This document shows positions 3,020 through 62,406 of a DNA stretch of 64,000 nucleotides, in pieces. The stretch comes from Macrostomum lignano (taxonomy: Eukaryota), in assembly GCA_002269645.1 (NCBI GenBank), contig NIVC01000995.1, positions 186,001 through 250,000 of the forward strand, in the 5' to 3' direction. The stretch's first letter is position 1; each line of letters begins with the position of its first letter. The position numbers and the translations under genes were made by a program. Below the pieces are notes generated by a model that was not told the origin of the DNA, did no database searches, and saw nothing but the letters and a program-made list of their open reading frames with translations.

Positions 3020-3570
3020 AGTAACTCAGCACCACACACTGTACACCTGACACAACTCAGCACCCGTCACTGTACACCTGACACAACTCAGCACCCCACA
3101 CTGTACACCTGACACAACTCAGCACCCCACACTGTACACCTGACACAACTCATCAACCCACACTGTACACCTGACACAACTCAGCAACCCACACTGTACA
3201 CCTGACACAACTCAGCAACCCACACTGTACACCTGACACAACTCAGCAACCCACACTGTACACCTGACACAACTCAGCACCCCACACTGTACACCTGACA
3301 CAACTCAGCACCCCACACTGTACACCTGACACGACTCAGCAACCCACACTGTACACCTGACACAGCTCAGCACCCCACACTGTACACCTGACACAACTCA
3401 GCAACCCACACTGTACACCTGACACAACTCAGCAACCCACACTGTACACCTGACACAACTCAGCAACCCACACTGTACACCTGACACAACTCAGCAACCC
3501 ACACTGTACACCTGACACGACTCAGCAACCCACACTGTACACCTGACACAGCTCAGCACCCGTCACTGTC
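3020..3570. repeat. 31-bp minisatellite ACTCAGCAACCCACACTGTACACCTGACACA, ~17 copies, intronic
   Basis: Seen directly. Begins ~10 nt after the CEP170-like exon-6 donor. Confidence 0.95.
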
Positions 3571-15349: not shown

Positions 15350-15797
15350 TTTATTTGCTGTCCTGACGAATGCAGAAATAGAATTTCCTCCTGCTTCCCA
15401 CTCTGTCCTTCCCACTCACGGCGAGGGTTTAAATAAAGCTACGCGGTTGAATGAAGGGCGAAGGGAAAAGGGAATTCCAAATCGGGCGGAGAGGCGGTGA
15501 GGGGTGGGGCGGTTCGATCGGGCCTCCTTTCTGCCCCCCAGCAGTTTTGCCCGCCCACGCGAATTTATAGGTCTTTTTTACAGCTGATGCAAGGCGAGGA
15601 GGAGACGGGGTAGGGGAGGGCAGAGTGCCCTGATTCGAAGCTTCCTTTGAAATTGAAGTGGAGGAAGTGAGATGAGATTGTGATTGAAGAAGACAGGGCG
15701 TGAGCGAGTGAGAAAGGGATGGAGAGATGAGAAGGTTATGAAATGTTTGAGGTCATGTGAAGATTATGAGAAGGAGTTGAGTTTAGCAAGTGAGTTA

Positions 15798-18700: not shown

Positions 18701-20995
18701 ACTGTGTGTCTGACCGTGTGTCTGACTGTGTGTCTGACCGTGTGTCTGACCGTGTGTCTGACCGTGTGTCTGACCGTGTGTCTGACCGTGTGTCTGACCG
18801 TGTGTCTGACCGTGTGTCTGACTGTGTGTCTGACTGTGTGTCTGACCGTGTGTCTGACTGTGTCTGACTGTGTGTCCGACCGTGTGTGTGACCGTGTGTC
18901 TGACTGTGTGTCTGACCGTGTGTCTGACTGTGTGTCTGACTGTGTGTCTGACCGTGTGTCTGACTGTGTGTCTGACCGTGTGTCTGACCGTGTGTCTGAC
19001 TGTGTGTCTGACCGTGTGTCTGACTGTGTATCTGACCGTGTGTCTGACCGTGTGTCTGACTGTGTGTCTGACTGTGTGTCTGACAGTGTGTCTGACTGTG
19101 TGTCTGACCGTGTGTCTGACCGTGTGTCTGACTGTGTCTGACTGTGTGTCTGACCGTGTGTCTGACTGTGTGTCTGACCGTGTGTCTGACCGTGTGTCTG
19201 ACCGTGTGTCTGACCGTGTGTCTGACCGTGTGTCTGACCGTGTGTCTGACTGTGTGTCCGACCGTGTGTGTGACCGTGTGTCTGACTGTGTGTCTGACCG
19301 TGTGTCTGACTGTGTGTCTGACTGTGTGTCTGACCGTGTGTCTGACTGTGTGTCTGACCGTGTGTCTGACCGTGTGTCTGACTGTGTGTCTGACCGTGTG
19401 TCTGACTGTGTGTCTGACCGTGTGTCTGACCGTGTGTCTGACTGTGTGTCTGACTGTGTGTCTGACTGTGTGTCTGACCGTGTGTCTGACCGTGTGTCTG
19501 ACCGTGTGTCTGACCGTGTGTCTGACCGTGTGTCTGACTGTGTGTCTGACTGTGTGTCTGACCGTGTGTCTGACTGTGTCTGACTGTGTGTCCGACCGTG
19601 TGTGTGACCGTGTGTCTGACTGTGTGTCTGACCGTGTGTCTGACTGTGTGTCTGACTGTGTGTCCGACCGTGTGTGTGACCGTGTGTCTGACTGTGTGTC
19701 TGACTGTGTGTCTGACTGTGTGTCTGACCGTGTGTCTGACTGTGTCTGACTGTGTGTCCGACCGTGTGTGTGACCGTGTGTCTGACTGTGTGTCTGACCG
19801 TGTGTCTGACTGTGTGTCTGACTGTGTGTCTGACCGTGTGTCTGACTGTGTGTCTGACCGTGTGACTGACTGTGTGTCTGACTGTGTGTCTGACCGTGTG
19901 TCTGACTGTGTGTCTGACCGTGTGTCTGACCGTGTGTCTGACTGTGTATCTGACCGTGTGTCTGACTGTGTGTCTGACTGTGTGTCTGACCGAGTCTGAC
20001 CGTGTGTCTGACTGTGTGACTGACTGTGTGTCTGACTGTGTGTCTGACCGTGTGTCTGACCGTGTGTCTGACTGTGTGTCTGACTGTGTGTCTGACCGTG
20101 TGTCTGACTGTGTGTCTGACTGTGTGTCTGACTGTGTGTCTGACCGTGTGTCTGACTGTGTGTCTGACTGTGTGTCTGACCGTGTGTCTGACTGTGTGTC
20201 TGACTGTGTGTCTGACCGTGTGTCTGACTGTGTGTCTGACCGTGTGTCTGACTGTGTCTGACTGTGTGTCTGACTGTGTCTGACTGTGTGTCTGACCGTG
20301 TGTCTGACTGTGTCTGACTGTGTGTCTGACCGTGTGTCTGACCGTGTGTCTGACTGTGTGTCTGACTGTGTGTCTGACCGTGTGTCTGACTGTGTGTCTG
20401 ACTGTGTGTCTGACCGTGTGTCTGACTGTGTGTCTGACTGTGTGTGTGACCGTGTGTCTGACCGTGTGTCTGACTGTGTGTCTGACTGTGTGACTGACTG
20501 TGTGTCTGACTGTGTGTCTGACCGTGTGTCTGACCGTGTGTCTGACTGTGTGTCTGACTGTGTGTCTGACCGTGTGTCTGACTGTGTCTGACTGTGTGTG
20601 TGACCGTGTGTCTGACCGTGTGTCTGACTGTGTGTCTGACTGTGTGTCTGACTGTGTGTCTGACTGTGTGTCTGACCGTGTGTCTGACTGTGTCTGACTG
20701 TGTGTCTGACTGTGTCTGACTGTGTGTCTGACCGTGTGTCTGACTGTGTCTGACTGTGTGTCTGACCGTGTGTCTGACCGTGTGTCTGACTGTGTGTCTG
20801 ACTGTGTGTCTGACTGTGTGTCTGACTGTGTGTCTGACTGTGTGTCTGACCGTGTGTCTGACTGTGTCTGACTGTGTGTGTGACCGTGTGTCTGACCGTG
20901 TGTCTGACTGTGTGTCTGACTGTGTGTCTGACTGTGTGTCTGACTGTGTGTCTGACTGTGTGTCTGACCGTGTGTCTGACTGTGTGTCTGACTGA
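15798..20995. repeat. 5.2-kb satellite, 12-bp unit (C/T)GTGTGTCTGAC, with higher-order structure
   Basis: Seen directly. The 1769-aa ORF and all overlapping ORFs are repeat translations. Confidence 0.98.
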
Positions 20996-21436
20996 GTGGG
21001 CAGGCAGAGTTGAATCTACTTGCCGACAGCTGGCCAAGATCGGATAGGGAAAATGTCCGGGGTTCAAGTCCAATTTATTTTAGTCTCTAACGGATGCATT
21101 CCCAAGCCACCAGCACTTTCAGGCCTGCCAACACCGCAAGGCAGTGTCTATTTTTGGAAGACATTTTCATCAAAGTTCGCAGCAAACACGCATGGGAAAT
21201 GTGTTGCACTAGAAATTATTGGAAGACCAAACACGTGACAAACATTGAGGCTCTTTGGAAGCGCATTTCATCGTCACTGCAGCACTGTGTGACATTTGGT
21301 CTTCATTGGTCTTCATGCACTTATAAACTTTTTTAGTTGGATCTCTTACATAGGAAGTTTGACAATAGGCATAAACAATTTTCTAAGTAGCAAAAACAGA
21401 AATATGATAGAAATCTGTGTTTTCAGTACCTGTGAA

Positions 21437-22664: not shown

Positions 22665-23845
22665 CCTACAGTGCAGTGGCACCCGAAACCTTACAGTGGC
22701 TCCCCAAGCCCAACAGTGGCGCCCCAAGCCCAACAGTGGCACCCCAAACACTACAGTGGCGCCCCAAGCCCAACAGTGGCACCCCAAACCCTACAGTGGC
22801 GCCCCAAGCCCAACAGTGGCACCCCAAACACTACAGTGGCGCCCCAAGCCCTACAGTGGCGCCCCCAAACTCTACAGTGGCGCCCCAAACTCTACAGTGG
22901 CGCCCCAAACCCTACAGTGGCGCCCCCAAACCCTACAGTGGCGCCCCAAGCCTACAGTGGCGCCCCAAACCCTACAGTGGCGCCCCAAACTCTACAGTGG
23001 CGCCCCAAACCCTACAGTGGCGCCCCAAACCCTACAGTGGCGCCCCAAATTCTACAGTGGCGCCCCAAACCCTACAGTGGCGCCCCAAACCCTACAGTGG
23101 CGCCCCAAGCCTACAGTGGAGCCCCCAAACCCTACAGTGGCGCCCCCAAACTCTACAGTGGCGCCCCAAACCCTACAGTGGCGCCCCAAACCCTACAGTG
23201 GCGCCCCAAGCCTACAGTGGAGCCCCCAAACCCTGCAGTGGAGCCCCAAACCTTACAGTGGCGCCCCCAAACTCTACAGTGGCGCCCCAAACCCTACAGT
23301 GGCGCCCCAAACCCTACAGTGGCGCCCCAAGCCTACAGTGGCGCCCCAAACCCTACAGTGGCGCCCCAAACTCTACAGTGGCGCCCCAAACCCTACAGTG
23401 GCGCCCCAAACCCTACAGTGGCGCCCCAAACTCTACAGTGGCGCCCCAAACCCTACAGTGGCGCCCCAAACCCTACAGTGGCGCCCCAAGCCTACAGTGG
23501 AGCCCCAAACCCTACAGTGGCGCCCCCAAACTCTACAGTGGCGCCCCAAACCCTACAGTGGCGCCCCAAACCCTACAGTGGCGCCCCAAGCCTACAGTGG
23601 AGCCCCCAAACCCTACAGTGGAGCCCCAAACCTTACAGTGGCGCCCCCAAACTCTACAGTGGCGCCCCAAACCCTACAGTGGCGCCCCAAACCCTACAGT
23701 GGCGCCCCAAGCCTACAGTGGAGCCCCAAACCTTACAGTGGAGCCCCAAACCTTACATTGGCGCCCTCAAACCCTACAGTGGCGCCCCAAGCCCAACAGT
23801 GGCGCCCAAGCTCTACAGTGGCGCCCTCAAACCTTACAGTGCGCC
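22665..23845. repeat. 20-21-bp minisatellite CTACAGTGGCGCCCCAAACC
   Basis: Seen directly. ORFs are open in all three + frames, typical of a repeat artefact. Confidence 0.96.
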
Positions 23846-26567: not shown

Positions 26568-27857
26568 CGAGGGGCACTATTAAAGTTCTGAGCCTGACCA
26601 AGATCTTATAGTGGCAAAGTGTTGAAACTTTAGGCTCTAAAAGCGCCACATGTTAATAGTCTATTGTCAACTTTTCAGAATTTTCTGCATTCCCTAAGTC
26701 CCACTGCACCATTTTATTTCCAGCACCCCATGGCATTTTCTCAAGAATTGAAGCTTGAGCACAGGGCAGTGATTAAATTTCTGACTCTGGAGGGCTCAAA
26801 GCCTGCTGAAATTCAAAGCCGCATGGCTAGTGTGTACGCTGACGCTGCCCCTCATACGCCACCATAAAGTGCTGGGCAGCCGAGTTCAAGCGTGGCCGCG
26901 ACTCGCTCGAAGATGACCCCCGATGTGGACGACCCCGGACTGCTGTCACTGCCGACAACATCCAGCGCATCCAGGCTCTGGTTGACAGTGACCAGCGGGT
27001 GAAAGTCAGGGAACTTGCGGCAGACACTGGACTCTCTGACCCGCAAGTCATTGAGATCCTGCACCAGCATCTTCATCTGTCCAAGGTTTCTGCCAGATGG
27101 ATCCCACGAATCTTGACAAGGGACCAAAAGACCGCACGGGTGCAGTACTCAAAGCTTGTCCTGGACTCCTACGATCCGGACCCTGCCAACTTTCTGTCCT
27201 GCTGCGTGACCGGGGATGAGACGTGGATCCATCACCACGATCCGAGTCCAAGCAGGAGTCCAAGCAGTGGCTGCCAGTTGGTTCACCTGCACCACTGAAG
27301 GCACGGACTGCATGCAGTGCGGGCAAGATTATGCTCACCGTCTTCTGGGATGCCAAGGGCCCGCTGCTGCTGGACTTTCTACCGCACAAGCAGACAGTCA
27401 CAGGCGCCTACTACGCTGACCTGATCGCCCGTCTGCGCGAAGCAATCAAGGAAAATAGGCGAGGGATGCTGAGCCGAGGTGTTGTGCTGCTGCACGACAA
27501 TGCACCGGCCCACACTAGCAGGATTGCCAAGGCTGCTGTCAGTGTCGCAGGGTTTCGAGAGCTGCCGCACCCAGCCTATTCACCAGACCTGGCCCCGAGC
27601 GACTTCCACCTGTTTCCACATCTCAAGCGGGCGCTCCGTGGACAGCGATTTGACACTGATGATGCGCTGAAGGATGCTGCAACTGCTTGGTTTGAGGGCT
27701 GCTCGGTGCAATTCTTCCAGAGTGGCATTGAGGCGCTGCGATCAAGATGCCATAGTGCATCTTGGTTGGGGGAGACTATGTTGAGAAAAGCTGATCTCAC
27801 TTTGCCCATATCTCCTCTCTTTCATATTAAGGCTCAGAACTTTAATAGTGCCCCTCG
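26568..27857 (+). mobile_element. Mariner (DD34D) transposon, full length, transposase frameshifted
   Basis: Perfect 28-bp TIRs CGAGGGGCACTATTAAAGTTCTGAGCCT with TA target duplications at 26566-67 and 27858-59. The transposase runs 26730-27794 with WIPRIL, GDETW, HDNAPAH and YSPDLAPSD (34 aa between D2 and D3). There are three 1-nt deletions at ~26850, ~27240 and ~27752. Confidence 0.95.
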
Positions 27858-28554
27858 TATGAATGAATATTTATCGATATTAATGGACACCAATGGGTAT
27901 TTTTGTAGACTCTGATTTGTAAACTGAGTTGAAGCGAGTGAGAAGACATCGTGAACTCTAAACTCTGGAGCATTGAACTCTCAGTGATCTGTATAGAGAG
28001 GCAGCACTTTAGCATGTCCCTGGTCTCTTGTCTCGAGTCAGTGGAATTCTGCCCCTGGGGCTCGCGGTAGCAGCAAAGCGAGTTAACCCCTCGGTTACTA
28101 GGAGAAGAAGATCGGATACGGAAGCTTCAATCCGCTCTTTGCTGGAGCAAATCACCGACCTGTACGCCTCATCTGTGCTCAAAAAAGTACACATTGAATG
28201 CTCTGGAATTTCCTCAAGTCAGCCAGTGCTCATGCGAGGGACAAAGCCTGTCCAGGCCTTCAAATCTGCATCTTATTAATACACCTGTGCTGGCCAATCT
28301 GCCTGCTGGCTCTCTCAGGGGACTGGAGTGGCCTCTGCAGCTGCCAGCACAGCAGATGAGAAGTCGAAATTACTTTGTAAGTAAACAGATTCACCTGACC
28401 GATTCAGGACCAATTTCCGAAGCGATTTTCTGAAACCAAATTGATTTCGTGAGGAAGTTCAGCGTCAAGGTACGGGTTGAATATGAAATAAATATGATGA
28501 ACATGACAGATACATGAATGAACATGATAAACATGATATAAACATGAATGAACA

Positions 28555-30115: not shown

Positions 30116-31843
30116 TCAGAGCTCGTCGGCGTCGTGCTCCGCCGGCCGCCGCCACAGCTGCCGGCAGTCGTCGCCTTCCAGCCGGACAGAGCAGGCGAAG
30201 CCGCCGCCGCTCGGAGACAGCCGCTGGCCGGCACCGAGGCCGGCGGCCCGGCGGCGCAGTTCCAGCCGGCCGCGGTAGCGCCAGGCGCCGGCGGCCGAGC
30301 CGCAGTAGCTTAGCATCAAGCGCTGGCCTCTGGCCTCCTCGGACGGCCAGCTGAGCCGCCAGGCCTCCGTGACCGCCTGGCCGACCTTGGTGAGGCCCAG
30401 CAGCAGGGTGCCGTTCTCCGGCCAGGCCGCCACCACCCGGCGCTGCAGCTTCACTGGCGAGCCTTCGAATAAGAAGCCGCCGGTGGTCTGGCCGGCCTCG
30501 GCCTCCAGCAGCTCGCCGCGGCACGGATGACAGTCGTGGAACGGGTGGCCGCCGCGGACGGCCAGCCACAAGCCATCGGCTTCGGCCAGAGTGGCTGGGG
30601 GGGCCCAGGCCTGCGAGCATGATGAATAAAGTAAATTTAACCTGTTAGATGGCACCAAACATACTGGGACAACCTCACGAGACGCCTAATGATACACCTA
30701 ATGAGGCGCCTAATGAAGCGTCTAATGGGTAACACAACTAGACACCTAATGAGACACCCAATGAGACACCTAATGAAATGCCTAAAGAGACACTAATGAG
30801 CACATAATGAGACACCTGATGAGATACCGAATGAGGCACCTATTGAGACACTAATAAGGACCTAATGAGACGCCTAATGAGACACCTAATGAGACACCTA
30901 ATGAGACGCCTAATGAGACACCTAATGAGACACCCAATGAGACGCCTAATGAAATGCCTAAAGAGACACTAATGAGCACCTAATGAGACACCTGATGAGA
31001 TACCGAATGAGGCACCTATTGAAACACTAATGAGCACCTAATGAGACACCTGATGAGATACCGAATGAGGCACCTATTGAGACACTAATAAGGACCTAAT
31101 GAGACGCCTAATGAGACGCCTACTAATGAGACACCTAATGAGGCACCTAATCAGACACCTAATGAGGCACCTAGTGAGACAACCTAATGAGGTGCCTAAT
31201 GAGATGCATGATGAGACACCTAATGAGACGCCTAATGAGATGCATAATGAGACACCTAATGGGATGCCTAATGAGATGCATAATGAGACACCTAATATGG
31301 AACCTACAAAGACACCTAATGAGACGTCAAATGAGGCACCTAATGAAACGTCAAATGAGACACCTAATAAGACATCTAATGAGATCAAGACAATCTTTAA
31401 AATCTCTAATTCTTTATGCTTCAAGTTTAGACCTGCAGCTGTTCAGGCCGGCATTCGTCCTGATCCTCATCCCAATCCTTCACCCCGTCCGCCGCCGCAG
31501 GCGGACTCAACTCGACGCAGTTGTGCTCAGTCACGGCGCAGGTGAGAAAGTCGGTGAGCAGTTGCTCAGCCCGGCAGCGGTAGAGGCAGGCGGCAGAGCA
31601 GGTGTCGCCGGAGCCGCCGCAGCTGTGCAGGCAGGTGAGACAGGCGCGGCAGTCGGAGTTCACAGCGCAGGCGTAGGACTGGCCGGGGCAGCTGTAGGCC
31701 ATGCACCAGGCGTCGAGCGAGTGGCCCGCCGCTGCGGCCGCCGAACGCAGCGCGTCGATGGCAGCAGCGTTGGCCGGCGGCGCTGCCAGGTGTAGAAGCG
31801 GCAGGGCCAGAAGCAGAAATTGTTGCACAGCAAATTTCCCCAT
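30116..31843 (-). CDS. Violaxanthin de-epoxidase-like (VDE/VDR) Cys-rich plus lipocalin protein, ~301 aa, with signal peptide and C-terminal ADEL
   Basis: Exons 31433-31843 and 30116-30610 (GT-AG, phase 0). A hydrophobic leader is followed by a 12-Cys domain, CMAYSC..CAVNSDCRACLTCLHSC..CSAAC..FLTCAVTEHNCV, whose spacing matches the VDE N-domain as I recall it. WLAVRGGHPFHDCHPC matches the VDE/VDR lipocalin strand-A motif. Confidence 0.75.
30670..31385. repeat. Degenerate 12-bp minisatellite GAGACACCTAAT filling the VDE-like intron
   Basis: Seen directly. Confidence 0.9.
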
Positions 31844-32194
31844 TCTATACAAGTAAATAGGTGGAACTTTCGCTAGTGTAGAATTTCAATTTTAAATACG
31901 CTCTGCGCAAACATGAGCTGCGCTGGCGGACTCTTGGCACCGCAGAGATCAAATTCCAATATAATGAAGATAACGACGCTCGAATCCTTTGGTAGCAGAG
32001 CAGCGGGCTTGCTGTTGCAGAAACTATTAATAGCACCATAGAAATCTATTGCACCACTGGGACACTACTTACTGTGGTCGGATGGTCAAAGTCTAGTTGG
32101 CTGGTGGGGTTTTAATTTAAATACGAGCGTATGTATGCATTTGTATTTTCGAATTTATGTAGATCAGCTGAATTTTTTAGGGCTGATAGTATGG

Positions 32195-33000
32195 GGAGGG
32201 TTGACTGCTCAACCTGGGGGTCCGGGAGGGTGACTGCTCAACCTGGGGGTCCGGGAGGGTGACTGGTCAACCTGGGGGTCCGGGAGGGTGACTGCTCAAC
32301 CTGGGGGTCCGGGAGGGTGACTGCTCAACCTGGGGGTCCGGGAGGGTGACTGCTCAACTTGGGGGTCCGGGAGGGTGACTGCTCAACCTGGGGGTCCGGG
32401 AGGGTGACTGCTCAACCTGGGGGTCCGGGAGGGTGACTGCTCAACCTGGGGGTCCGGGAGGGTGACTGCTCAACCTGGGGGTCCGGGAGGGTGACTGCTC
32501 AACCTGAGGGTCTGGGAGGGTGACTGTTCCTGAGGGTCTGGGAGGGTGACTGCTCAGCCTGAGGGTCTGGGAGGGTGACTGTTCCTGAGGGTCTGGGAGG
32601 GTGACTGTTCCTGAGGGTCTGGGAGGGTGACTGCTCAGCCTGAGGGTCTGGGAGGGTGACTGTTCCTGAGGGTCTGGGAGGGTGACTGTTCCTGAGGGTC
32701 TGGGAGGGTGACTGTTCCTGAGGGTCTGGGAGGGTGACTGTTCCTGAGGGTCTGGGAGGGTGACTGTTCCTGAGGGTCTGGGAGGGTGACTGTTCCTGAG
32801 GGTCTGGGAGGGTGACTGTTCCTGAGGGTCTGGGAGGGTGACTGCTCAGCCTGAGGATCTGGGAGGGTGACTGTTCCTGAGGGTCTGGGAGGGTGACTGC
32901 TCAGCCTGAGGTTCTGGGAGGCTGGCTGCTCAGCCTGAGGATCTGGGAGGCTGGCTGCTCAGCCTGAGGTTCTGGGAGGCTGGCTGCTCAGCCTGCGAAC
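32195..33000. repeat. Minisatellite grading from a 29-bp unit GGGTCCGGGAGGGTGACTGCTCAACCTGG to 26-bp variants
   Basis: Seen directly. Confidence 0.95.
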
Positions 33001-33656: not shown

Positions 33657-34964
33657 CGAGGGATACTCTAAAAGTTTTGCAATTCGACTATTTAAAGTTA
33701 ATTTTGCCAAACTTTTCTATTACAATCCTTCAAAGTAGGCTCCCCGGAACTGCAAACACTTGTGCGCTCGTCCGAGCCACTTGTTCATCAAGCCCTGGAA
33801 GTCTTCAATTGGGATGCCGTCAATCGCCTCCTTCGCCGCCTGCTCCAGCTCCTCGTCGGACTGAAACCTGCGCCCCCTAAGCGACTTTTTGATTTCTGGA
33901 AAGAGCCAGAAGTCGCAGGGGGCGAGGTCTGGTGAGTAGGCCGGGTGTGGTAGCGTTGAAATGCCCTCTTGGTCCAGGAACGCTCGAGTTGCAGCAGCCG
34001 TGTGGGCGGGGGCGTTGTCATGGTGAAGCTTCCGCCCTCGCATTCCCGTCCTTGGCGCCCTCTGGGTCACGCTGTCGATCACGACTGGCAAGCACTCTTC
34101 AGTGTACCATCGAGCAGTGACTGTAGCTTGACCCTCCAGCTTCACCATCGCCACCACGCCTTGTGAGTCGAAGAAGATGGCAAACATCCGCTTGCCCTGG
34201 GACCGGGACCGCCTTGCTTTCAGGGGTCGTTGACCACCTTCCGGCACCCACTCTGCACTGCTGCGCTTTGTCTCGACGTCAAAATGATACAGAAACGTCT
34301 CATCACCAGTGATGACCTCAGAGCGGCGCTGATGGCTCCCGTGCTCATATCGATTGATGAGAAACTGACAGAACTCCATGCGGGCCTGTTTTTGAGCATC
34401 TGTCAGGATGTGGGGTATCCATCGGGCACAAAGCTTCCTGACTCTCAGGTGATCGTGTAGAATCGTATCGACCGCTGCCGATCCAATGCCGACATTCATA
34501 GCTAGCATGTCCGTGGTGATTCGCGGATCCTGATGAATCAGCTCCTGCACTGCAGCGATGTTTTCCTCCGTCACTGCTGTCGGAGGTCTCCCGGGCCGGG
34601 GGTCGTCAGAAAAGCTGGTCCTGCCGGCCTGGAACTCGCGGTACCAGCGTGTAACCGTAGCATATGACGGCGCTTGAGCCCCCAATGTTGCTAGTAGCTC
34701 GGCATGAGTCTCAAGCGCCGTGAGCTTTCGCTTGTGGCAGTACCAAATTAGTAGCCGATTCTGCTCACGATTCAATTCCATGGCTGCAGCTGTACAGTTA
34801 AGGAGTCTCTGACTTTGACTGGGGGCTGAGCAGGCGTATATGTATGAATTCACTTGAAAATTGAGGTGGGGACTATGTACATGTTTATTGTACAGAGAGT
34901 TGGTTTTGAAGATTGTGCGACTTGCGCAAGTGGTTGAATTGCAAAACTTTTGGAGTATCCCTCG
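33657..34964 (-). mobile_element. Mariner (DD34D) transposon with an intact 353-aa transposase (33720-34781)
   Basis: ~31-bp TIRs CGAGGGATACTC(T/C)AAAAGTTTTGCAATTC with TA duplications at 33655-56 and 34965-66. The ORF is uninterrupted, with an HTH region, WIPHIL, GDETF, HDNAPAH and YSPDLAPCD. Confidence 0.97.
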
Positions 34965-35566: not shown

Positions 35567-38500
35567 CTAGGGTGACGAATCCGGAGACGAGAGGCCCAAC
35601 AAATTTGGTGAGGTTTCCACAACTGGCCGAATATCCTGCAGCTGGACAGCATCGCCTTCCGTACCTGCGACATTGGCGGCGACATTATTAGCAACGTCGG
35701 CAGCGACATTGGCGGCGACATCAGTAGCAACGTCGGCAGCGACATCATTGGCGACATCATTAGCAACGTCGGCAGCGACATCATTGGCGACATCATTAGC
35801 GACGTCGGCAGCGACATCATTAGCGACGTCGGCAGCGACATCATTAGCGACATCATTAGCGACGTCGGCAGCGACATTGGAACTATTTTCAGCGTCTCCC
35901 CGGTCGCTAACAGCAGCGACAACGTCGGCTGGCGGACCAGCAAATGTTGCCGGCAGTTGATGGGCCTGCGACAGAGGCGGGTAGTCGCGAAGGAATTCAG
36001 GAACGGAGGCGGCGGCAGCAAGCCGCTCCATATAAGGTAGCAGGTCGCGCAGCTCAGTGTCGGCCTGGTCGCCCACCCAGGTGTGCACCCGGATCTGCGG
36101 AGCAGACAGGGTCATGGTAATTCAAAGATGCAAACCATGAAGCCCAAATTTCAAAAATAATGAGATTTAGAACCTTAATTTTGACATATAATTCTAAAAC
36201 ATTTTAATCCGGATCTCAAATTATGATTAAATAAGGATCACAAGTCATCAAATTTAGAGCACCAATCAGCAAATGAAGGTAAAAAAAACAATAAATTCAG
36301 GTAACAATGATCAAGTCCAGGTCAGGACTCACCAAATTCAGCTCACAACTAATCAAATCCAGGTCACAAATCATCAAATCCAGGTCACAAATCATCAAAT
36401 CCAGGTCACAAATCATCAAATTCAGGTCACAAATCACCAAATCCAGGTCACATACCATTAAATCCAGGTCACAAATCATCAAATGCAAGTCACAATTAAA
36501 TAAATCCAGGTCACAAATAATCAAATCCAGGTCACAAATAATCAGATCCAGGTCAAAAATCATCAAACCCGGGTCACAAATCATCTAATCTAGATCAAAA
36601 TCATCAAATCCAGGTCACAAATCATTAAATCCGGGTCACAAATCATCAAATCCAGGTCACAAATCATCAGATCCAGGTCACAAATCATCAAATCCAGGTC
36701 ACAAATCATTAAATCCGGGTCACAAATCATCAAATCCAGGTCACAAATCATCAGATCCAGGTCACAAATCATCAAATCTAGGTCACAAATCATCAAATCC
36801 GGGTCACAAATAATCAAAATCAAGATTCTGAAACCTCGAAACCTAGGTCGAAATAAGATTATATAATGATTCTGAAATCCAGATAGCATCAGACCCGAAA
36901 ATTGAAAGAGATGAGAGCTTAAAGAACTACAGTTTTCTGTCTGTGAGCTTTCCAATCCAGATGACTGTAAATCAAGCCAGCCAAGGACACGAACCGCATT
37001 CTCCGTATTGAACATGTAGGACGCGGGCGAATTATCAATGATAACGCAGCGGTCAACCGGCCGGCCCAGCTGGGCCAGGTCCTTCACGAAATTGTCGCAG
37101 TGAAGGACGCAGGACTCGCGAAACAGGCGGTGCTTGAATGTGGACCACCGGTCCAGACGGTCCGACACGGGGTCTGCGTACTGCGGGTGAAAATATTACT
37201 GTTTAAAATGACACTCTGGGAGAACGCGATCGCCAGTGACCCCGGGTTCGATTCCGCGCGTGGGCCACATTAATTAGGGGCTTGAGCACTAATCAGCGGA
37301 CAAAGGTTCTATTGAGAGCTAACGGTGCAAGAAATACCTTAGCGAGGCTGGCGGTGAAGAGCACGCATTCGTACAGCTGGCCCATTCTTTCCAGGAATTC
37401 ATCCGCGTATGGCCGCTTCAACACGTACACCTGGTGCACCAGGCCTTCGATTTCAACGTCGATGACAAAGTCCGGCTCATCGACAAACTGTTAGAAAAAT
37501 TATATAGCGAGGTCGAGAGCTAATTTCAGGTGGAATATAAATGTTATTTTGAGGACCTGAAGGACGTTTGCCCAGCAACTGAGGATCTGGGAGGCTGGCC
37601 CAGCAACTGAGGATCTGGGAGGCTGGCCCAGCAACTGAGGATCTGGGAGGCTGACCCAGCAACTGAGGATCTGGGAGGCTGGCCCAGCAACTGACGATCT
37701 GGGAGGCTGGCTCAGCAACTGACGATCTGGGAGGTTGGCCCAGCAACTGAGGATCTGGGAGGCTGGCCCAGCAACTGAGGATCTGGGAGGCTGGCCCAGC
37801 AACTGACGATCTGGGAGGCTGGCTCAGCAACTGACGATCTGGGAGGTTGGCCCAGCAACTGAGGATCTGGGAGGCTGGCCCAGCAACTGAGGATCTGGGA
37901 GGCTGGCCCAGCAACTGACGATCTGGGAGGCTGGCTCAGCAACTGACGATCTGGGAGGTTGGCCCAGCAACTGAGGATCTGGGAGGCTGGCCCAGCAACT
38001 GACGATCTGGGAGGCTGGCTCAGCAACTGACGATCTGGGAGGTTGGCCCAGCAACTGAGGATCTGGGAGGCTGGCCCAGCAACTGACGATCTGGGAGGAT
38101 GGCTCAGCAACTGAGGATCTGGGAGGCTGGCCCAGCAACTGAGGATCTGGGAGGCTGGCCCAGCAACTGACGATCTGGGAGGTTGGCCCAGCAACTGAGG
38201 ATCTGGGAGGCTGGCCCAGCAACTGACGATCTGGGAGGATGGCTCAGCAACTGAGGATCTGGGAGGCTGGCCCAGCAACTGAGGATCTGGGAGGCTGGCC
38301 CAGCAACTGACGATCTGGGAGGCTGGCTCAGCAACTGACGATCTGGGAGGTTGGCCCAGCAACTGAGGATCTGGGAGGCTGGCCCAGCAACTGACGATCT
38401 GGGAGGCTGGCTCAGCAACTGACGATCTGGGAGGTTGGCCCAGCAACTGAGGATCTGGGAGGCTGGCCCAGCAACTGACGATCTGGGAGGATGGCTCAGC

Positions 38501-41500
38501 AACTGAGGATCTGGGAGGCTGGCCCAGCAACTGAGGATCTGGGAGGCTGGCCCAGCAACTGACGATCTGGGAGGTTGGCCCAGCAACTGAGGATCTGGGA
38601 GGCTGGCCCAGCAACTGACGATCTGGGAGGATGGCTCAGCAACTGAGGATCTGGGAGGCTGGCCCAGCAACTGAGGATCTGGGAGGCTGGCTCAGCAACT
38701 GACGATCTGGGAGGTTGGCCCAGCAACTGAGGATCTGGGAGGATGGCTCAGCAACTGAGGATCTAAGAGGCTGGCCCAGCAACTGAGGATCTGGGAGGCT
38801 GGCCCAGCAACTGAGAATCTGGGAGGCTGGCCCAGCAACTGAGGATCTGGGAGGCTGGCCCAGCAACTGAGAATCTGGGAGGCTGGCCCAGCAACTGAGG
38901 ATCTGGGAGGCTGGCCCAGCAACTGACGATCTGGGAGGATGTGGCTGAGCAACTGAGGATCTGGGAGGCTGGCTCAGCAACTGACGATCTGGGAGGCTGG
39001 CTCAGCAACTGACGATCTGGGAGGTTGGCCCAGCAACTGGGGATCTGGCAGGCTGGCCCAGCAACTGAGGATTTGGGAGGCTGGCCCAGCAACTGAGGAT
39101 CTGGGAGGATGTGGCTGAGCAACTGAGGATCTGGGAGGCTGGCCCAGCAACTGACGATCTGGGAGGATGTGGCTGAGCAACTGAGGATCTGGGAGGCTGG
39201 CCCAGCAACTGACGATCTGGGAGGCTGGCTCAGCAACTGACGATCTGGGAGGTTGGCCCAGCAACTGACGATCTGGGAGGCTGGCCCAGCAACTGACGAT
39301 TTGGGAGGTTGGCCCAGCAACTGGGGATCTGAGAAGCTGGCCCAGCAACTGAGGATCTGGGAGGCTGGCCCAGCAACTGAGGATCTGGTAGGTTGGCCCA
39401 GCAACTGAGGATCTGGGAGGCTGGCCCAGCAACTGACGATCTGGGAGGATGGCTCAGCAACTGAGGATCTGGGAGGCTGGCCCAGCAACTGAGGATCTGG
39501 GAGGCTGGTCCAGCAACTGAGGATCTGGGAGGCTGGCTCAGCAACTGAGGATCTGGGAGGCTGGGCCAGTGGAAACCTGGTAGCAAAGCCAATGCCCAAC
39601 CTTGAATGAGCTGTGCACCAGAGTTTCGTCCAAGTCAATAACAGCACAAATCTTATCGCCCAAGTCGGGATCTCGCGGTCCCAGCAGGTCGATAGAGAAT
39701 GTCTGGCCATTCTGCCCGTGATGGTGATGATGGTGATGGTTGTGGTGCTGCTGTTGCTGCTGCTGTTGTTGGCGCCTTCTAGTGGACGAGCGCCGATTAA
39801 AGCAGAAGCAGCAAAGCAGCTCTCGAAGCGGCCGAGGCTTTGACGGCTCGTTGACAGTAACGACATCAACTGTTGGCTCATCTGTGTCGGCTTTTTCTGC
39901 CGGGTCCTGCACAATCGGACTGATGACCTCATCCGAAGCTGCTGCAGTATCACCTGGTGGTAAGCAAATCATAAGTTTTGGTCATGTACCCTACCCGAAA
40001 CCCATTTCTGGATAGTTTTTTGAATTTTCAAGATTCAAACCAAAACGGAAGACTTAATTTTATGGAAAATATACGGGCACATAATGTTATGAGTAGATAA
40101 AATGGCATTGATTAGATAGAAAATGTGACAAGTTTGTTTTGTAAAAATTGTAAATTTAATGTAAAACACATGGCATTGTATTTGAATAGACTTACTACCA
40201 CTTGTCCTAGCCCCCTCTCAATCTTAGTGAAGTGCATAGTGCTTGGCTGACTCCAAGCATCTGCCAAGTGGTACAACACTTGGAATCGCAGGCAATCCTG
40301 TGCTGCCATCTCTTGCTACCCCCTGCTACATAGAACCTTCTTTATGCTCAACCAAAGGGATCTTAGAGTAGTCAGCATGGCTGACTTCATTTGCTATTAC
40401 TTCCTCCAAGGCCAGGTACCTAAGGAGTAATGCTTTTTTGTAATTCAGACAGTACAATGCTAAGCAACTTATTTGCCACTGCCCAATTTTCACCAGGACC
40501 AGGCTTACTCACTTTGGGCCAAATCTGGTTTTCTCCAATATTTGCAGGCCTAAAAGCATAAGTACTATTGCTTGCCTGGTACCTCAGGGACATGGGATGA
40601 TTTGAGTTCTTCCCTATCATTAGTGAGGAGGACCATACTAGAGGCAAGACCAGTGGGTCCCTTGAGCAACATCACATCACTTTAATGGGAGTCCTTGGTT
40701 TCCAGGGGCTAGCAGAATGGGCGATCTCCCTTGCAAAGAATCTGTTCAAATTACAGTTTAATTAACAAATTATGTTATCACATTTACATAATCATGTCTG
40801 GTGATGATAGACTGTTTGAGAGTCTAGCTGAGAATGACCAGAAGTTAAAGTTTCGTTAGTTTCCCATTATTTATGTTGGTCAGCAACATCAAAAAAATTC
40901 GCAATAATGTGTCCACAGTCACCTGGTGTCATCTGTTGAAGGAGCTAATGGTGTTGGGGCAATGATTGAATGCTTGAGAAACTAGTTGAGGATGCGTAGC
41001 AGTTCAGGTTTGCTTGCCCATTATTGAAGCTTGATAAGAAAAACCTGACATAGTTACAAAAGGATGTGGATGTCCATAGTCACCTGATGCCACCTGTTGA
41101 AGGTGCCGATAGTGTCAGGGTGATGACGGAATGCCCAGGAGACTAGCTGAGGGTGTCTGACAGTTAAGGCTTGAACACCGTTGAGGCTTAATTGGCAAAA
41201 CTAGAGAAATTTGTATCAGAGTGTTTATAGTCGTTGCCTAGTATCATCTGTTGAAGGTGCCGACGGCATTGGGATTATGACAGAATGTTCAAGAAACTAG
41301 CTGAGAATGTCTATCAGTTGAGGCTTGCCCATAATTGAAGCTTGATAAGAAAAATCTGACATATTTGCAACAGGATGTTCATAGTCATTTGGTGTCATCT
41401 GTTGAAGGTGCTGATGGCGTCAGGGTGATGACAGAATGCATGAGAGACTAGCTGAGGATGTCCAGCAGTTGAGGCTTGCCCATTGTCAAGGCTTGATCAG

Positions 41501-62216: not shown

Positions 62217-62365
62217 TCACAGAGAAACGCTGACTTCTGCAGCTCCCCCAGCTGTCAGCGAGTTGCTGACGTCAGCAATTTGATCCGGGCAGGTGCGCAA
62301 TTGGCGAAGCTCTCCGCTTTGAACCTCAACTGCTCGGCGATGCTGCAGGAGCTGTCGCTGTCTGA

Positions 62366-62406
<41 letters not shown>

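What the first reader, a model, noticed from the sequence alone, without database searches (positions are those of the whole stretch)
30116..31843. Intron-containing animal gene encoding a violaxanthin de-epoxidase-like protein
Seen: a two-exon 301-aa ORF with a signal peptide and a Cys domain spaced C-x4-C-x6-C-x5-C-x5-C-x3-C-x6-C-x3-C...F-x2-CAV-x4-CV, followed by W-x3-G-x-HP-x2-DC-x-PC. Known: this Cys-rich plus lipocalin architecture defines plant and algal VDE and the VDL/VDR relatives that act on xanthophylls. Animals have no xanthophyll cycle. Inference: this is either a horizontally acquired and intronised algal-type gene or a little-studied animal branch that may bind or modify dietary carotenoids.
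Basis: partly seen in the sequence, partly recalled or inferred. Interest (0 to 1): 0.85.

Follow-up and report, generated by a model that had tools for sequence, protein, structure and literature searches.

The report
Flatworm gene for VDE-like lipocalin protein
A real two-exon gene of the diatom-eating flatworm Macrostomum lignano encodes a protein related to the plant and algal carotenoid enzyme violaxanthin de-epoxidase. It fits best with a little-studied group of such proteins in alga-eating animals, which may process pigments from their food.

Summary
On the minus strand, exon 1 (31843-31433), a GT-AG phase-0 intron (31432-30611) and exon 2 (30610-30116) give a 301-aa protein. It has a signal-peptide-like N-terminus, a Cys-rich domain and a predicted 8-strand lipocalin barrel.

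- **Family:** Pfam VDE scores 55 bits against a cut-off of 25.7.
- **Organism:** the window is Macrostomum lignano. Host genes and mariner elements flank the gene. A collinear paralogous locus carries the same intron.
- **Constraint:** exons diverge 1.3% between the two loci, against 5.6-7.4% for intron and 3' flank.
- **Relatives:** the protein lies outside the VDE group and outside the VDL and VDR clades (each 100% bootstrap). It scores best against short secreted homologues on chromosome-scale scaffolds of bivalves, abalone, chiton and amphioxus.
- **Key residues:** the ten N-domain Cys, D163, E219 (Glu, as in VDL/VDR), W221 and Y239 are kept. The VDE pH switch, the Glu-rich tail and the ascorbate-site Gln are not.
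- **Origin:** recent transfer from dietary diatoms and contamination are rejected. Ancient transfer versus vertical descent is unresolved.
- **Function:** this is inferred only. The likeliest role is a VDL-like enzyme, or else a binder, acting on dietary epoxy or allenic xanthophylls.
- **Gaps:** transcription was not shown. The proteins are already in databases but uncharacterised.

The parts
31433..31843 (-). Coding exon 1 (aa 1-137): start codon, signal-peptide-like N-terminus, Cys-rich domain and acidic linker
   Evidence: Identical exon boundary in the paralog L004.
31766..31843 (-). Codons 1-26, putative signal peptide (MGKFAVQQFLLLALPLLHLAAPPANA)
   Evidence: Read from the sequence. Hydrophobic core plus A-x-A; inference only, no predictor was run.
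31451..31705 (-). Cys-rich helical N-domain (aa 47-131, 13 Cys). All ten Cys conserved in VDE/VDL/VDR are present: C47, 52, 59, 65, 71, 75, 82, 86, 102, 109.
   Evidence: Pfam match over aa 46-177. Residue mapping to Arabidopsis VDE. AlphaFold2 helices 45-106 with pLDDT 83-95.
30611..31432 (-). Single spliceosomal intron: GT..AG, phase 0, 42% GC
   Evidence: Same donor and acceptor sequences in the paralog, where the intron is 610 bp.
30679..31384 (.). 12-mer minisatellite (GAGACACCTAAT, about 59 copies) filling the intron
   Evidence: Tandem Repeats Finder.
30116..30610 (-). Coding exon 2 (aa 138-301 plus TGA at 30116-30118): lipocalin domain and C-terminal tail
30251..30580 (-). Predicted eight-strand lipocalin barrel (aa 148-257)
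   Evidence: AlphaFold2 strands 150-257. Foldseek top hits are all lipocalins, including VDE 3cqn/3cqr. A profile of the short group that includes this protein hits 3cqn at E=3.3e-29.
30365..30367 (-). Codon E219, aligned with the catalytic D177 of Arabidopsis VDE (Glu, as in VDL and VDR)
   Evidence: PMC13181403.
30359..30361 (-). Codon W221, aligned with the substrate-stacking W179 of VDE
   Evidence: PMC13181403.
30305..30307 (-). Codon Y239, aligned with the catalytic Y198 of VDE
   Evidence: PMC13181403.
30119..30130 (-). C-terminal A-D-E-L, an ER-retention-like tetrapeptide also present in the paralog
   Evidence: Sequence. That ADEL fits the KDEL-type pattern [KRHQSA]-[DENQ]-E-L is my own knowledge and was not tested.
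30597..30603 (.). Homopolymer (G7 on the + strand, C7 in the gene). It is one base shorter in public contig NIVC01000067.1, which breaks the frame there.
   Evidence: Explains the truncated model P0003 and the alternative-donor model P0002.

Best explanation
This is a genuine nuclear gene of the flatworm Macrostomum lignano. It encodes a 301-aa secretory-pathway protein of the violaxanthin de-epoxidase (VDE) superfamily.

**Architecture.** A signal-peptide-like N-terminus is followed by a disulfide-rich helical domain with all ten family-conserved cysteines. Next comes an eight-strand lipocalin barrel, then a short tail ending in ADEL.

**Placement.** It is not VDE, VDL or VDR in the strict sense. 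It fits best with an uncharacterised group of short (about 250-300 aa) VDE-like proteins. That group is found in alga-eating animals (bivalves, abalone, chiton, amphioxus) and in a few heterotrophic microbes.

**Most likely mechanism (inferred, not shown).** The barrel binds a hydrophobic polyene from the diatom diet, such as fucoxanthin or fucoxanthinol, diadinoxanthin or violaxanthin, stacked on W221.
- E219 would protonate an epoxide or allenic end group, with Y239 and D163 assisting. This is the arrangement of the algal VDL tautomerases.
- The VDE pH-switch His, the Glu-rich tail and the ascorbate-site Gln are absent. A constitutive VDL-like isomerisation or epoxide opening is therefore more likely than an acid-activated, ascorbate-dependent de-epoxidation.

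**My sub-probabilities.**
- Real host gene of the VDE superfamily: about 0.95.
- Closest to the animal/heterotroph short group: about 0.75.
- Acts on dietary carotenoids at all: about 0.55.
- Catalytic rather than a binder: about 0.4.
For: **Shown**
- Gene structure and ORF.
- Pfam VDE 55.4 bits against a cut-off of 25.7.
- AlphaFold2 model with pLDDT 79.6 and pTM 0.75, with a helical N-domain and an 8-strand barrel.
- Foldseek top hits are all lipocalins, including VDE 3cqn/3cqr.
- A profile of the short group that includes this protein hits VDE 3cqn at E=3.3e-29.
- Residue mapping: ten Cys conserved; D114 to D163; D177 to E219; W179 to W221; Y198 to Y239. The literature states that VDL and VDR carry Glu at 177 and keep W179 and Y198 (PMC13181403).
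- Host origin: the best database hits are M. lignano proteins. The window also carries a rhodopsin-type GPCR, FHA and NIF-phosphatase exons, and mariner transposases.
- A collinear paralogous locus has the same neighbour gene and the same splice sites.
- Constraint: 12 of 906 coding differences against 78 of 1201 in intron plus 3' flank, Fisher p=1e-9. None of the 7 amino-acid differences touches a Cys or a mapped key residue.
- Affinity: the named-animal clade HMM gives 97.9 bits over aa 39-257, algal VDL 69, VDE 43 and VDR 39.
- Animal homologues lie on 3-211 Mb scaffolds.

**Inferred**
- Every named carrier feeds on or parasitises algae. M. lignano is reared on the diatom Nitzschia, and the chytrid infects carotenoid-producing green algae.
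- Bivalves and tunicates are known to convert dietary fucoxanthin and peridinin by allene-to-acetylene change and epoxide cleavage (PMC6949322). No enzyme is named for these conversions in the passages read, and my searches found none.
- VDL1 and VDL2 perform that kind of chemistry in algae.
Against: - No transcript evidence was obtained. No transcriptome-derived copy of the protein appeared in the protein collection (sources are NCBI and UniRef only).
- dN/dS between the two loci is 0.69 from only 12 differences, so protein-level constraint is not demonstrated by that measure.
- The Pfam match covers only profile positions 3-124 of 242. The barrel half is very diverged and Ala/Gly/Arg-rich.
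- Foldseek does not rank VDE above other lipocalins, and TM-scores are about 0.4-0.6.
- The putative catalytic pair is not universal in the short group. Position 177 is E or D in 16 of 22 sequences (S in oyster and clam, T in the chytrid). Position 198 is Y in 16 of 22. Some members may therefore only bind.
- Q119 (ascorbate site) is Arg and H121 is Glu here.
- An ADEL ending suggests ER residence, which fits poorly with a digestive-lumen enzyme.
- The grouping with animal sequences has no bootstrap support.
Confidence: 0.45

Rival explanations
1. The protein is a non-catalytic carrier. It would be a secreted or ER lipocalin that binds and stores or transports dietary carotenoids, or another lipid, with the Cys-rich domain serving only as a structural cap.
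For: - Most lipocalins are passive carriers (PMC13181403).
- The barrel resembles ApoD, crustacyanin, bilin-binding protein and retinoic-acid-binding protein about as well as it resembles VDE.
- The acid at position 177 is lost in oyster, clam, chytrid and P0060, and Tyr198 is lost in several members.
- The ascorbate-site Q119 is not kept in Macrostomum.
Against: - Macrostomum itself keeps E219, W221, Y239 and D163. A buried acid in a hydrophobic barrel is unusual for a pure carrier and is the hallmark of VDE, VDL and VDR.
- All ten Cys of the N-domain, which VDE needs for activity, are kept.
Confidence: 0.25
2. On origin: the animal genes, including this one, are not vertically inherited. They entered molluscs, cephalochordates and Macrostomum separately by old horizontal transfers from microbial eukaryotes or bacteria, and were later intronised in some lineages. 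This concerns origin only and is compatible with either functional reading.
For: - Distribution among named hits is patchy: molluscs, amphioxus, one flatworm genus, a chytrid, a vampyrellid and a bacterial MAG.
- Oyster and chiton genes are intronless.
- The three amphioxus introns and the single Macrostomum intron lie at different positions.
- No other flatworm appeared among the named hits.
- The short group is not resolved as animal-only.
Against: - Several mollusc classes share clearly related copies on chromosome-scale scaffolds.
- The Macrostomum protein scores best against the animal profile.
- Only about 30 of the 101 hits could be named, and the unnamed nearest relatives (P0004, P0130, P0060) may well be animals.
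- Lack of resolution is not evidence for transfer.
Confidence: 0.4
3. Recent transfer from, or contamination by, the diatom food (Nitzschia) or another alga. On this reading the segment is not really a host gene, or it is a very young acquisition of an algal VDE, VDL or VDR.
For: - The worms are fed diatoms, and diatoms carry VDE, VDL1/2 and VDR.
- An oyster EST of this family was once suspected to be a contaminant (PMC2483416).
Against: - The best non-Macrostomum hit among 1.84 billion representatives is 29% identical, and no algal protein is close.
- The protein lies outside the VDL and VDR clades (100% bootstrap each) and outside the VDE group.
- The exons are 67-75% GC with GC3 0.79-0.90, which I judge from my own knowledge to be unlike diatom coding sequence and which sits at the upper end of neighbouring host ORFs (0.55-0.73).
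- The gene has a spliceosomal intron filled with a minisatellite of the kind found throughout the window.
- Mariner elements and host genes flank it.
- Two collinear loci are 5.6-7.4% diverged in intron and 3' flank, so the gene predates that duplication.
Confidence: 0.03
4. The gene is a decaying or unexpressed relic. The ORF is intact but no longer used, and its odd composition reflects GC-biased drift.
For: - dN/dS is 0.69.
- The protein has very high Ala, Gly and Arg content and GC3 of 0.85.
- No transcript-derived copy was found.
- The Pfam match covers only half the profile.
Against: - Both loci keep a 301-codon ORF, the same splice sites, every conserved Cys and the key barrel residues.
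- Coding sequence is about five times less diverged than adjacent non-coding sequence, p=1e-9.
- The only frameshift seen is a homopolymer error in an older long-read assembly.
Confidence: 0.1

Closest known systems
Short 'violaxanthin de-epoxidase, chloroplastic-like' or 'VDE lipocalin domain-containing' proteins of animals. Examples: Crassostrea/Magallana XP_052700485, Haliotis XP_046346709, Liolophura XP_064612532, Tegillarca KAJ8311672, Dreissena, Mercenaria, Sinanodonta, and Branchiostoma CAH1247036 / XP_035689847. All are uncharacterised.
   Same: - Size of 250-300 aa, with an N-terminal signal-like peptide.
- Ten-Cys N-domain, lipocalin barrel, and a short tail with an F-(x)-C-S-x(5-7)-C motif.
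- No Glu-rich domain and no plastid targeting.
- Mostly Glu at the position of VDE D177.
- This group gives the best profile score for the Macrostomum protein.
   Different: - Only 21-27% identical over the full length.
- Macrostomum lacks the N-Q-T-C sequon that most members carry.
- It has 'HPFHDCHPC' where the others have 'NPxYDCFDC', an acidic linker insertion (aa 113-137) and an ADEL end.
- Tree grouping is unsupported, and gene structures differ.
VDL1/VDL2 (VDE-like proteins of diatoms, haptophytes, eustigmatophytes and alveolates). VDL1 is the violaxanthin-to-neoxanthin tautomerase; VDL2 converts diadinoxanthin to allenoxanthin.
   Same: - Cys-rich plus lipocalin architecture.
- Glu instead of Asp at position 177, with W179 and Y198 kept.
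- Glu-rich C-domain weak or absent.
- Second-best profile score, 69 bits.
   Different: - The Macrostomum protein lies outside the 100%-supported VDL clade.
- It lacks the VDL barrel motif (GRMFGLTFWENWY) seen in the, 21 sequences.
- The VDL profile aligns only to aa 19-176.
- There is no plastid-targeting extension.
- The host cannot make the substrate; it would have to come from food.
Violaxanthin de-epoxidase proper (Arabidopsis NPQ1; PDB 3CQN/3CQR)
   Same: - Pfam family PF07137.
- Ten conserved Cys.
- Lipocalin fold.
- D114, W179 and Y198 equivalents.
   Different: - Glu, not Asp, at 177.
- Q119 is Arg and the H121 pH trigger is Glu.
- R138, H168 and D206 are not kept.
- There is no Glu-rich C-terminal domain of about 100 aa.
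- There is no thylakoid-lumen targeting, and an animal has no xanthophyll cycle to serve.
VDR (VDE-related proteins of plants and algae, function unknown)
   Same: Cys-rich plus lipocalin architecture, with Glu at 177 and Y198 kept.
   Different: - Lowest profile score, 39 bits.
- Outside the 100%-supported VDR clade.
- VDR proteins carry long N-terminal extensions and the FYFSVLDNGV motif, which is absent here.
Classical animal lipocalins that handle pigments or lipids (apolipoprotein D, crustacyanin, bilin-binding protein, epididymal retinoic-acid-binding protein)
   Same: Eight-strand barrel. Foldseek E is about 1e-4 to 1e-3, and there are weak profile hits.
   Different: They have no Cys-rich N-domain, sequence similarity is only marginal, and they are not in Pfam VDE.

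Membership tests
VDE superfamily (Pfam PF07137) | Score above the Pfam gathering threshold | tested here: met
   55.4 bits against 25.7, E=8.1e-15, aa 46-177 matching profile positions 3-124 of 242.
VDE superfamily (Pfam PF07137) | N-terminal domain with the ten conserved cysteines | tested here: met
   At C9, 14, 21, 27, 33, 37, 46, 50, 65 and 72 align with C47, 52, 59, 65, 71, 75, 82, 86, 102 and 109. The definition comes from PMC13181403.
VDE superfamily (Pfam PF07137) | Central lipocalin barrel homologous to that of VDE | tested here: met
   AlphaFold2 predicts an 8-strand barrel over aa 150-257. Foldseek returns lipocalins, including 3cqn/3cqr. A profile of the short group that includes this protein hits 3cqn at E=3.3e-29.
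VDE superfamily (Pfam PF07137) | Buried acid, Trp and Tyr of the active site (At D177/W179/Y198) | tested here: met
   E219, W221 and Y239 in a MAFFT alignment. Glu is the VDL/VDR state. Their position inside the barrel is inferred from strand periodicity, not measured.
VDE sensu stricto | Asp at position 177 | tested here: not met
   Glu (E219).
VDE sensu stricto | pH-activation apparatus: H121 trigger, and the R138, H168 and D206 set | tested here: not met
   H121 is E170, R138 is a gap, H168 is L210 and D206 is W247.
VDE sensu stricto | Ascorbate-site residues D114 and Q119 | tested here: inconclusive
   D114 is kept as D163, but Q119 is R168.
VDE sensu stricto | Glu-rich C-terminal domain of about 100 aa | tested here: not met
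   Only 44 residues follow the barrel, and they are not Glu-rich.
VDE sensu stricto | Placement in the VDE group of the tree | tested here: not met
   In the NJ tree rooted on Arabidopsis VDE, the Macrostomum protein falls on the far side of 96-97% splits from Arabidopsis VDE, P0094 and P0021. The VDE profile gives only 43 bits.
VDE sensu stricto | Ascorbate-dependent de-epoxidation of violaxanthin at acid pH | not testable with these tools
   Needs an enzyme assay.
VDL (VDL1/VDL2) | Placement in the VDL clade | tested here: not met
   The VDL clade has 100% bootstrap and excludes it.
VDL (VDL1/VDL2) | Glu at 177 with W179 and Y198 kept, and a reduced C-terminal domain | tested here: met
VDL (VDL1/VDL2) | Tautomerase activity on violaxanthin or diadinoxanthin | not testable with these tools
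   Needs an assay, for example the tobacco transient expression cited.
VDR | Placement in the VDR clade | tested here: not met
   The VDR clade has 100% bootstrap and excludes it. The VDR profile gives 39 bits, the lowest of all.
Animal/heterotroph short VDE-like group (uncharacterised) | Full-length best match to a profile of the named animal members | tested here: met
   97.9 bits over aa 39-257. The next best, the unnamed relatives, give 88, and algal VDL gives 69.
Animal/heterotroph short VDE-like group (uncharacterised) | Architecture: signal peptide, Cys domain, barrel and a short two-Cys tail, 250-300 aa in all | tested here: met
   Alignment A1. C277 and C286 lie in 'FACSVRLEGDDC', compared with 'FCSPxxxxC' in the other members.
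Animal/heterotroph short VDE-like group (uncharacterised) | Monophyly with the animal members in a tree | tested here: inconclusive
   The group is an unresolved grade in the NJ tree. Macrostomum pairs with P0004 and P0130 at 14%. No maximum-likelihood program was available.
Animal/heterotroph short VDE-like group (uncharacterised) | Shared intron positions or synteny with other animal members | tested here: not met
   Amphioxus has 3 introns, the nearest about 11 residues away. The oyster and chiton genes are intronless.

The most novel reading that the evidence does not exclude
The short VDE-like proteins of alga-eating animals, including this flatworm gene, may be the enzymes behind a long-described set of conversions for which I found no assigned enzyme. 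Invertebrates open epoxides and convert allenes to acetylenes in dietary fucoxanthin, peridinin and diadinoxanthin, giving products such as halocynthiaxanthin- and mytiloxanthin-type pigments. On this reading the family's patchy distribution tracks algivory: bivalves, abalone, chiton, amphioxus, diatom-fed Macrostomum, an alga-parasitic chytrid and a vampyrellid that consumes algae and fungi. Macrostomum lignano would then be the first genetically tractable animal (RNAi, transgenesis, a defined diatom diet) in which to test it.
Probability: 0.3. Interest if true: 0.8.

Novelty: new variant of a known kind. Interest (0 to 1): 0.55.

Why it matters
VDE, VDL and VDR are treated in the literature as proteins of photosynthetic eukaryotes (2026 review). 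The one animal sequence noticed earlier, an oyster EST in 2008, was set aside as doubtful.

The genomic evidence assembled here shows that a distinct short form sits on chromosome-scale scaffolds of several mollusc classes and of amphioxus. It also sits in a duplicated host region of a flatworm, where it has an intron, and most members keep the VDL/VDR-type active-site residues.

Animals cannot make carotenoids, yet they remodel algal xanthophylls by reactions for which I found no assigned enzyme. Those reactions are of the chemical type that VDLs perform in algae. If the link holds, it supplies candidate enzymes for a decades-old gap in marine carotenoid metabolism. M. lignano would offer an experimental system for testing it.

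If the link fails, the finding is still a correctly annotated, uncharacterised lipocalin-family gene. It would also stand as a caution that the RefSeq name 'violaxanthin de-epoxidase, chloroplastic-like' on animal proteins is automatic labelling.

Tried and rejected
- **Word-index search with alignment A1.** It returned only Macrostomum proteins and one bacterial protein. It was probably swamped by low-complexity words, so the search was wasted.
- **The same search with trimmed alignment A3.** It effectively found only relatives of the first sequence. It did add Dreissena, Sinanodonta and Mercenaria, but no new phyla.
- **phmmer of the single protein against PDB.** It gave only spurious WD40 hits. 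VDE 3cqn appeared only with a profile.
- **Intron-position comparison as a test of vertical descent.** No shared positions were found, so it was uninformative.
- **Naming the nearest relatives P0004, P0130 and P0060.** Their contigs are short pieces from JGI sample 3300030743 and from runs SRR26183990/91 and SRR31984834. No paper mentions these accessions.
- **Transcript evidence.** No paper mentions the locus tags or pairs VDE with Macrostomum.
- **Biopython bootstrap.** It timed out. I redid it with my own distance code and 100 replicates.
- **Global alignment of the 600 bp upstream of the two loci.** It gave 29% 'divergence', which is a misalignment across an indel, so I did not use it.
- **Rejected readings.** Diatom contamination or recent transfer; membership of VDE proper, VDL or VDR; and the idea that P0003 (189 aa) shows a pseudogene, since that frameshift is a homopolymer assembly error.
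Full report
**1. What is in the sequence**

The feature lies on the minus strand.
- An ATG at 31843 is preceded by in-frame stops and by a TATTTAAAA about 50 nt upstream.
- It opens a 411-nt exon that ends ...CTGCAG|GTCTAA at 31433/31432.
- An 822-nt intron (42% GC) ends ...TGCTCGCAG| at 30611.
- A 495-nt exon then runs to a TGA at 30116-30118.
- The junction is phase 0, and the spliced ORF is 301 codons.
- The exons are 67% and 75% GC, with GC3 of 0.85.
- The intron is almost entirely a 12-mer minisatellite (GAGACACCTAAT, about 59 copies).

The second motif is W152-x4-G-x-HP-x2-DC-x-PC, one residue longer than written.

Pfam finds one family: VDE (PF07137), E=8.1e-15, 55.4 bits against a cut-off of 25.7. 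The match covers aa 46-177 and profile positions 3-124 of 242.

**2. Whose gene it is**

The best database hits are three Macrostomum lignano proteins at 91-99% identity.

The window is also typical of that genome.
- About twenty minisatellite arrays.
- Two mariner/Mos1-type transposase ORFs flanking the gene, at 27223-27915 (+) and 33720-34853 (-).
- A reverse-transcriptase fragment, plus FHA and NIF-phosphatase exons.
- A 483-aa rhodopsin-family GPCR ORF.

GenBank contig NIVC01000067.1 (locus L009) is the same locus.
- Exon 1 is 100% identical, and the flanks are 97-99.9% identical.
- It has a one-base deletion in a homopolymer at the start of exon 2 (window + strand G7, 30597-30603).
- That error accounts for the truncated 189-aa model P0003.
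- It also accounts for the 276-aa model P0002, which uses an internal GT to regain the frame (and my reading of the sequence).

A second contig, NIVC01001700.1 (locus L004), carries a collinear paralogous copy.
- It has the same upstream NIF-phosphatase neighbour.
- It has the same donor and acceptor sequences and a 610-nt intron.
- It encodes a 301-aa product that is 98% identical.

Divergence between the two loci was measured as follows.

| Region compared | Differences | Divergence |
|---|---|---|
| Coding sequence | 12 of 906 | 1.3% |
| Intron | 45 of 610 aligned | 7.4% |
| 3' flank | 33 of 591 aligned | 5.6% |

- Coding against non-coding gives Fisher p=1e-9.
- dN/dS is 0.69 from 4 synonymous and 8 non-synonymous changes. 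That is too few to be informative.
- None of the seven amino-acid differences touches a Cys or any residue mapped below.
- Synonymous sites are also less diverged than non-coding sequence (p=6e-4). I cannot explain this; codon bias or gene conversion are possible.

Together these results exclude contamination. They also show that the gene predates the duplication that produced the two loci.

**3. What the protein is**

A full HMMER search of 1.84 billion representative proteins gave 101 hits at E<=1e-3, but only two non-Macrostomum hits below 1e-10. The protein is thus a very divergent member of its family.

Scored against clade profiles, the 99 non-Macrostomum hits sort as follows.

| Group | Hits |
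|---|---|
| Algal VDE/VDL type | 50 |
| VDR type | 18 |
| Unnamed class ('NQTCIFQCTSDFENDVYD') | 5 |
| VDE type | 3 |
| Short proteins of about 250-320 aa | 23 |

Look-ups named many of the short ones.
- **Bivalves:** oysters (Crassostrea/Magallana), blood clam (Tegillarca), zebra mussel (Dreissena), Sinanodonta and Mercenaria.
- **Other molluscs:** abalone (Haliotis) and a chiton (Liolophura).
- **Cephalochordates:** amphioxus (Branchiostoma, two species plus a hybrid).
- **Microbes:** a chytrid parasite of Haematococcus (Quaeritorhiza) and a vampyrellid amoeba (Leptophrys).
- One more member sits on a bacterial MAG contig.

The animal genes lie on scaffolds of 3-211 Mb, and some have ordinary animal neighbours. 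RefSeq labels several of them 'violaxanthin de-epoxidase, chloroplastic-like'. This appears to be an automatic name.

The Macrostomum protein aligns with this group from the first Cys to the end of the barrel. It was scored against profiles built without it.

| Clade profile | Score (bits) | Residues aligned |
|---|---|---|
| Named animals | 97.9 | 39-257 |
| Three unnamed nearest relatives | 88 | 30-259 |
| Algal VDL | 69 | 19-176 |
| Unnamed class | 53 | 26-113 and 198-246 |
| VDE | 43 | 37-176 |
| VDR | 39 | 33-170 |

A neighbour-joining tree was built from 255 columns, with Kimura distances and 100 bootstraps.
- VDL, VDR and the unnamed class each receive 100% support, and all exclude the Macrostomum protein.
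- The VDE-type sequences (Arabidopsis, P0094, P0021) lie at the base of the tree, which was rooted on Arabidopsis VDE. They are separated from everything else by 96-97% splits.
- Inside the short group nothing relevant is resolved. Macrostomum pairs with P0004 and P0130 at 14%.

No maximum-likelihood program was available.

**4. Structure and key residues**

AlphaFold2 was run with the 104-sequence alignment and gave pLDDT 79.6 and pTM 0.75.
- It predicts a helical bundle for the Cys domain (aa 45-106, pLDDT 83-95).
- It predicts eight beta strands between residues 150 and 257.

Foldseek against the PDB returns only lipocalins among the top hits, at E about 1e-4. These include C8-gamma, epididymal retinoic-acid-binding protein and the VDE lipocalin domain 3cqn/3cqr. 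VDE is among the best hits but is not distinctly the best.

A profile of the short group that includes this protein hits 3cqn at E=3.3e-29 and ApoD at 7e-5.

I mapped residues onto Arabidopsis VDE. The sequence came from my memory. Its lipocalin part was checked against the 3cqn alignment printed, and the numbering agrees with the residues named in PMC13181403.

| Arabidopsis VDE | Macrostomum | Status |
|---|---|---|
| Ten conserved Cys | C47 to C109 | all kept |
| D114 | D163 | kept |
| C118 | C167 | kept |
| D177 | E219 | Glu |
| W179 | W221 | kept |
| Y198 | Y239 | kept |
| Q119 | R168 | changed |
| H121 | E170 | changed |
| R138, H168, D206 | gap, L210, W247 | not kept |

The Glu-rich C-domain is absent.

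According to the 2026 review, Glu at 177 with W179 and Y198 kept is exactly the VDL/VDR state. D177 is the proposed proton donor to the epoxide, and Y198 contacts ascorbate.

Within the 22 short-group sequences:
- D114 is invariant.
- Position 177 is E or D in 16.
- W179 is kept in 20.
- Y198 is kept in 16.

Oyster and clam carry Ser at 177. The group may therefore be functionally mixed.

The protein ends in ADEL in both paralogs. By my own knowledge this fits the KDEL-type ER-retention pattern. It was not tested.

**5. How it probably works**

*Shown:* a conserved, duplicated host gene encodes a VDE-superfamily fold with a VDL/VDR-like set of cavity residues.

*Inferred:* the ligand is a dietary xanthophyll. 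The reasons are as follows.
- Every characterised member of the superfamily acts on epoxy or allenic xanthophylls.
- M. lignano is reared on the diatom Nitzschia curvilineata.
- All named carriers of the short form feed on or parasitise algae. I take this from general knowledge of their biology.
- Bivalves and tunicates convert dietary fucoxanthin and peridinin by allene-to-acetylene change and by hydrolytic or oxidative epoxide cleavage (PMC6949322). The passages read name no enzyme for these steps, and none turned up in my searches.

The pH switch, the Glu-rich tail and Q119 are missing. I therefore favour a constitutive VDL-like acid-catalysed rearrangement over an ascorbate-dependent, acid-activated de-epoxidation.

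The main functional rival is a non-catalytic carotenoid or lipid carrier.

**6. Origin**

Recent transfer from the food diatom is rejected (section 2).

Whether the animal genes descend from one ancestral animal gene, or arrived by several old transfers, cannot be decided here.
- Distribution is patchy.
- Mollusc genes are intronless.
- Amphioxus has three introns. The nearest one lies about 11 residues from the Macrostomum intron position.
- The tree is unresolved.
- The three nearest relatives are unnamed pieces from environmental or sequencing-run assemblies.

**7. Comparison with what is known**

- Coesel et al. 2008 saw a single oyster EST of this family and doubted it.
- A Manila clam genome paper listed a VDE family in passing.
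- A heterotrophic stramenopile VDE-like gene was reported in 2014.
- The 2026 VDE review treats VDE, VDL and VDR as proteins of photosynthetic eukaryotes.
- I found no functional work on any animal member.

The proteins themselves are already in GenBank and UniProt with the Pfam domain attached. The gene is therefore not a discovery as such. The added value is the case that it is a distinct animal/heterotroph variant of the superfamily with a testable dietary-carotenoid role.

**8. Verdict**

The VDE-like identity and the 'little-studied animal branch' hold. 'Horizontally acquired algal-type gene' is not supported for any recent event.
- Novelty: a new variant of a known kind.
- Interest is moderate (0.55). 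The identity is solid and the algivory link is suggestive. Against that, function, expression and phylogenetic origin are untested, and the Macrostomum member is an atypical, fast-evolving representative.

Noticed in passing
window 15798-20992: A 5.2-kb array of a 12-mer (GTGTCTGACCGT, about 437 copies, 91% matches) with strong AT and GC skew. It produces a spurious 1769-aa ORF (15764-21073, minus strand) with no Pfam hit.
   Followed up: partly
window, whole length (e.g. 280-1442, 3023-3569, 22674-23845, 32194-32995, 37570-39569, 53945-54770, 57159-58569): About twenty minisatellite arrays with periods of 12-62 bp and mostly 70-98% copy identity fill much of the window. Several create long artefactual ORFs.
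   Followed up: partly
window 33720-34853 (-) and 27223-27915 (+): Mariner/Mos1-type transposase ORFs flank the gene. The first is 377 aa with HTH_48, HTH_32 and DDE_3 and looks intact. The second is a partial DDE domain.
   Followed up: partly
window 62217-63668 (-): A single-exon ORF of 483 aa with a full rhodopsin-family 7TM domain (PF00001, 248 bits). It is probably a GPCR gene.
   Followed up: no
window 36590-37168 (-); L004 1-2898; L009 1-2752: An NIF/CTD-phosphatase-like exon lies upstream of the VDE-like gene. The same neighbour is present at both paralogous loci, so synteny is conserved across the duplication.
   Followed up: partly
window 11688-12254 (-) and 42606-43184 (+): An ORF with an FHA domain (probably an exon of a larger gene) and a reverse-transcriptase fragment.
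   Followed up: no
window 30597-30603; L009 about 7241: Public assembly GCA_002269645.1 (contig NIVC01000067.1) is one base short in this homopolymer. Database proteins BOX15_Mlig021800g1 (189 aa, frameshifted) and UniProt A0A1I8G4Z2 (276 aa, internal donor) appear to be artefacts of that error.
   Followed up: yes
window 30116-31843 compared with L004 10001-11516: Synonymous sites of the two paralogs are less diverged (1.7%) than intron and flank (5.6-7.4%), p=6e-4. Codon-bias selection, GC-biased gene conversion or exon-limited conversion could explain it. None was tested.
   Followed up: partly
L010 488-1390, L011 403-1305 (protein P0036): A 300-aa VDE-domain protein with a lipoprotein-like signal (…FFIQAC) sits on bacterial MAG contigs next to enoyl-CoA hydratase and nitronate-monooxygenase-like genes. 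It groups with the vampyrellid sequence at 84% bootstrap. The family therefore also occurs in bacteria.
   Followed up: partly
protein P0010 (KAJ3084678.1, Quaeritorhiza haematococci): The chytrid homologue is named 'Vitamin D3 receptor' in GenBank. This is evidently a mix-up of the acronym VDR (VDE-related) with the vitamin D receptor.
   Followed up: no
proteins P0042, P0045, P0047, P0063, P0091: A further well-supported (100%) but unnamed class of VDE-domain proteins carries the motif NQTCIFQCTSDFENDVYD. It is known here only from metatranscriptome, Tara Oceans and sequencing-run assemblies, and it is sister to VDR at 56% bootstrap.
   Followed up: no
L002 3001-3801 (oyster), L003 3001-3813 (chiton), L001 3001-5820 (amphioxus): The mollusc members are single-exon genes, while the amphioxus gene has three introns. 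Gene structure in this family varies strongly between phyla.
   Followed up: yes
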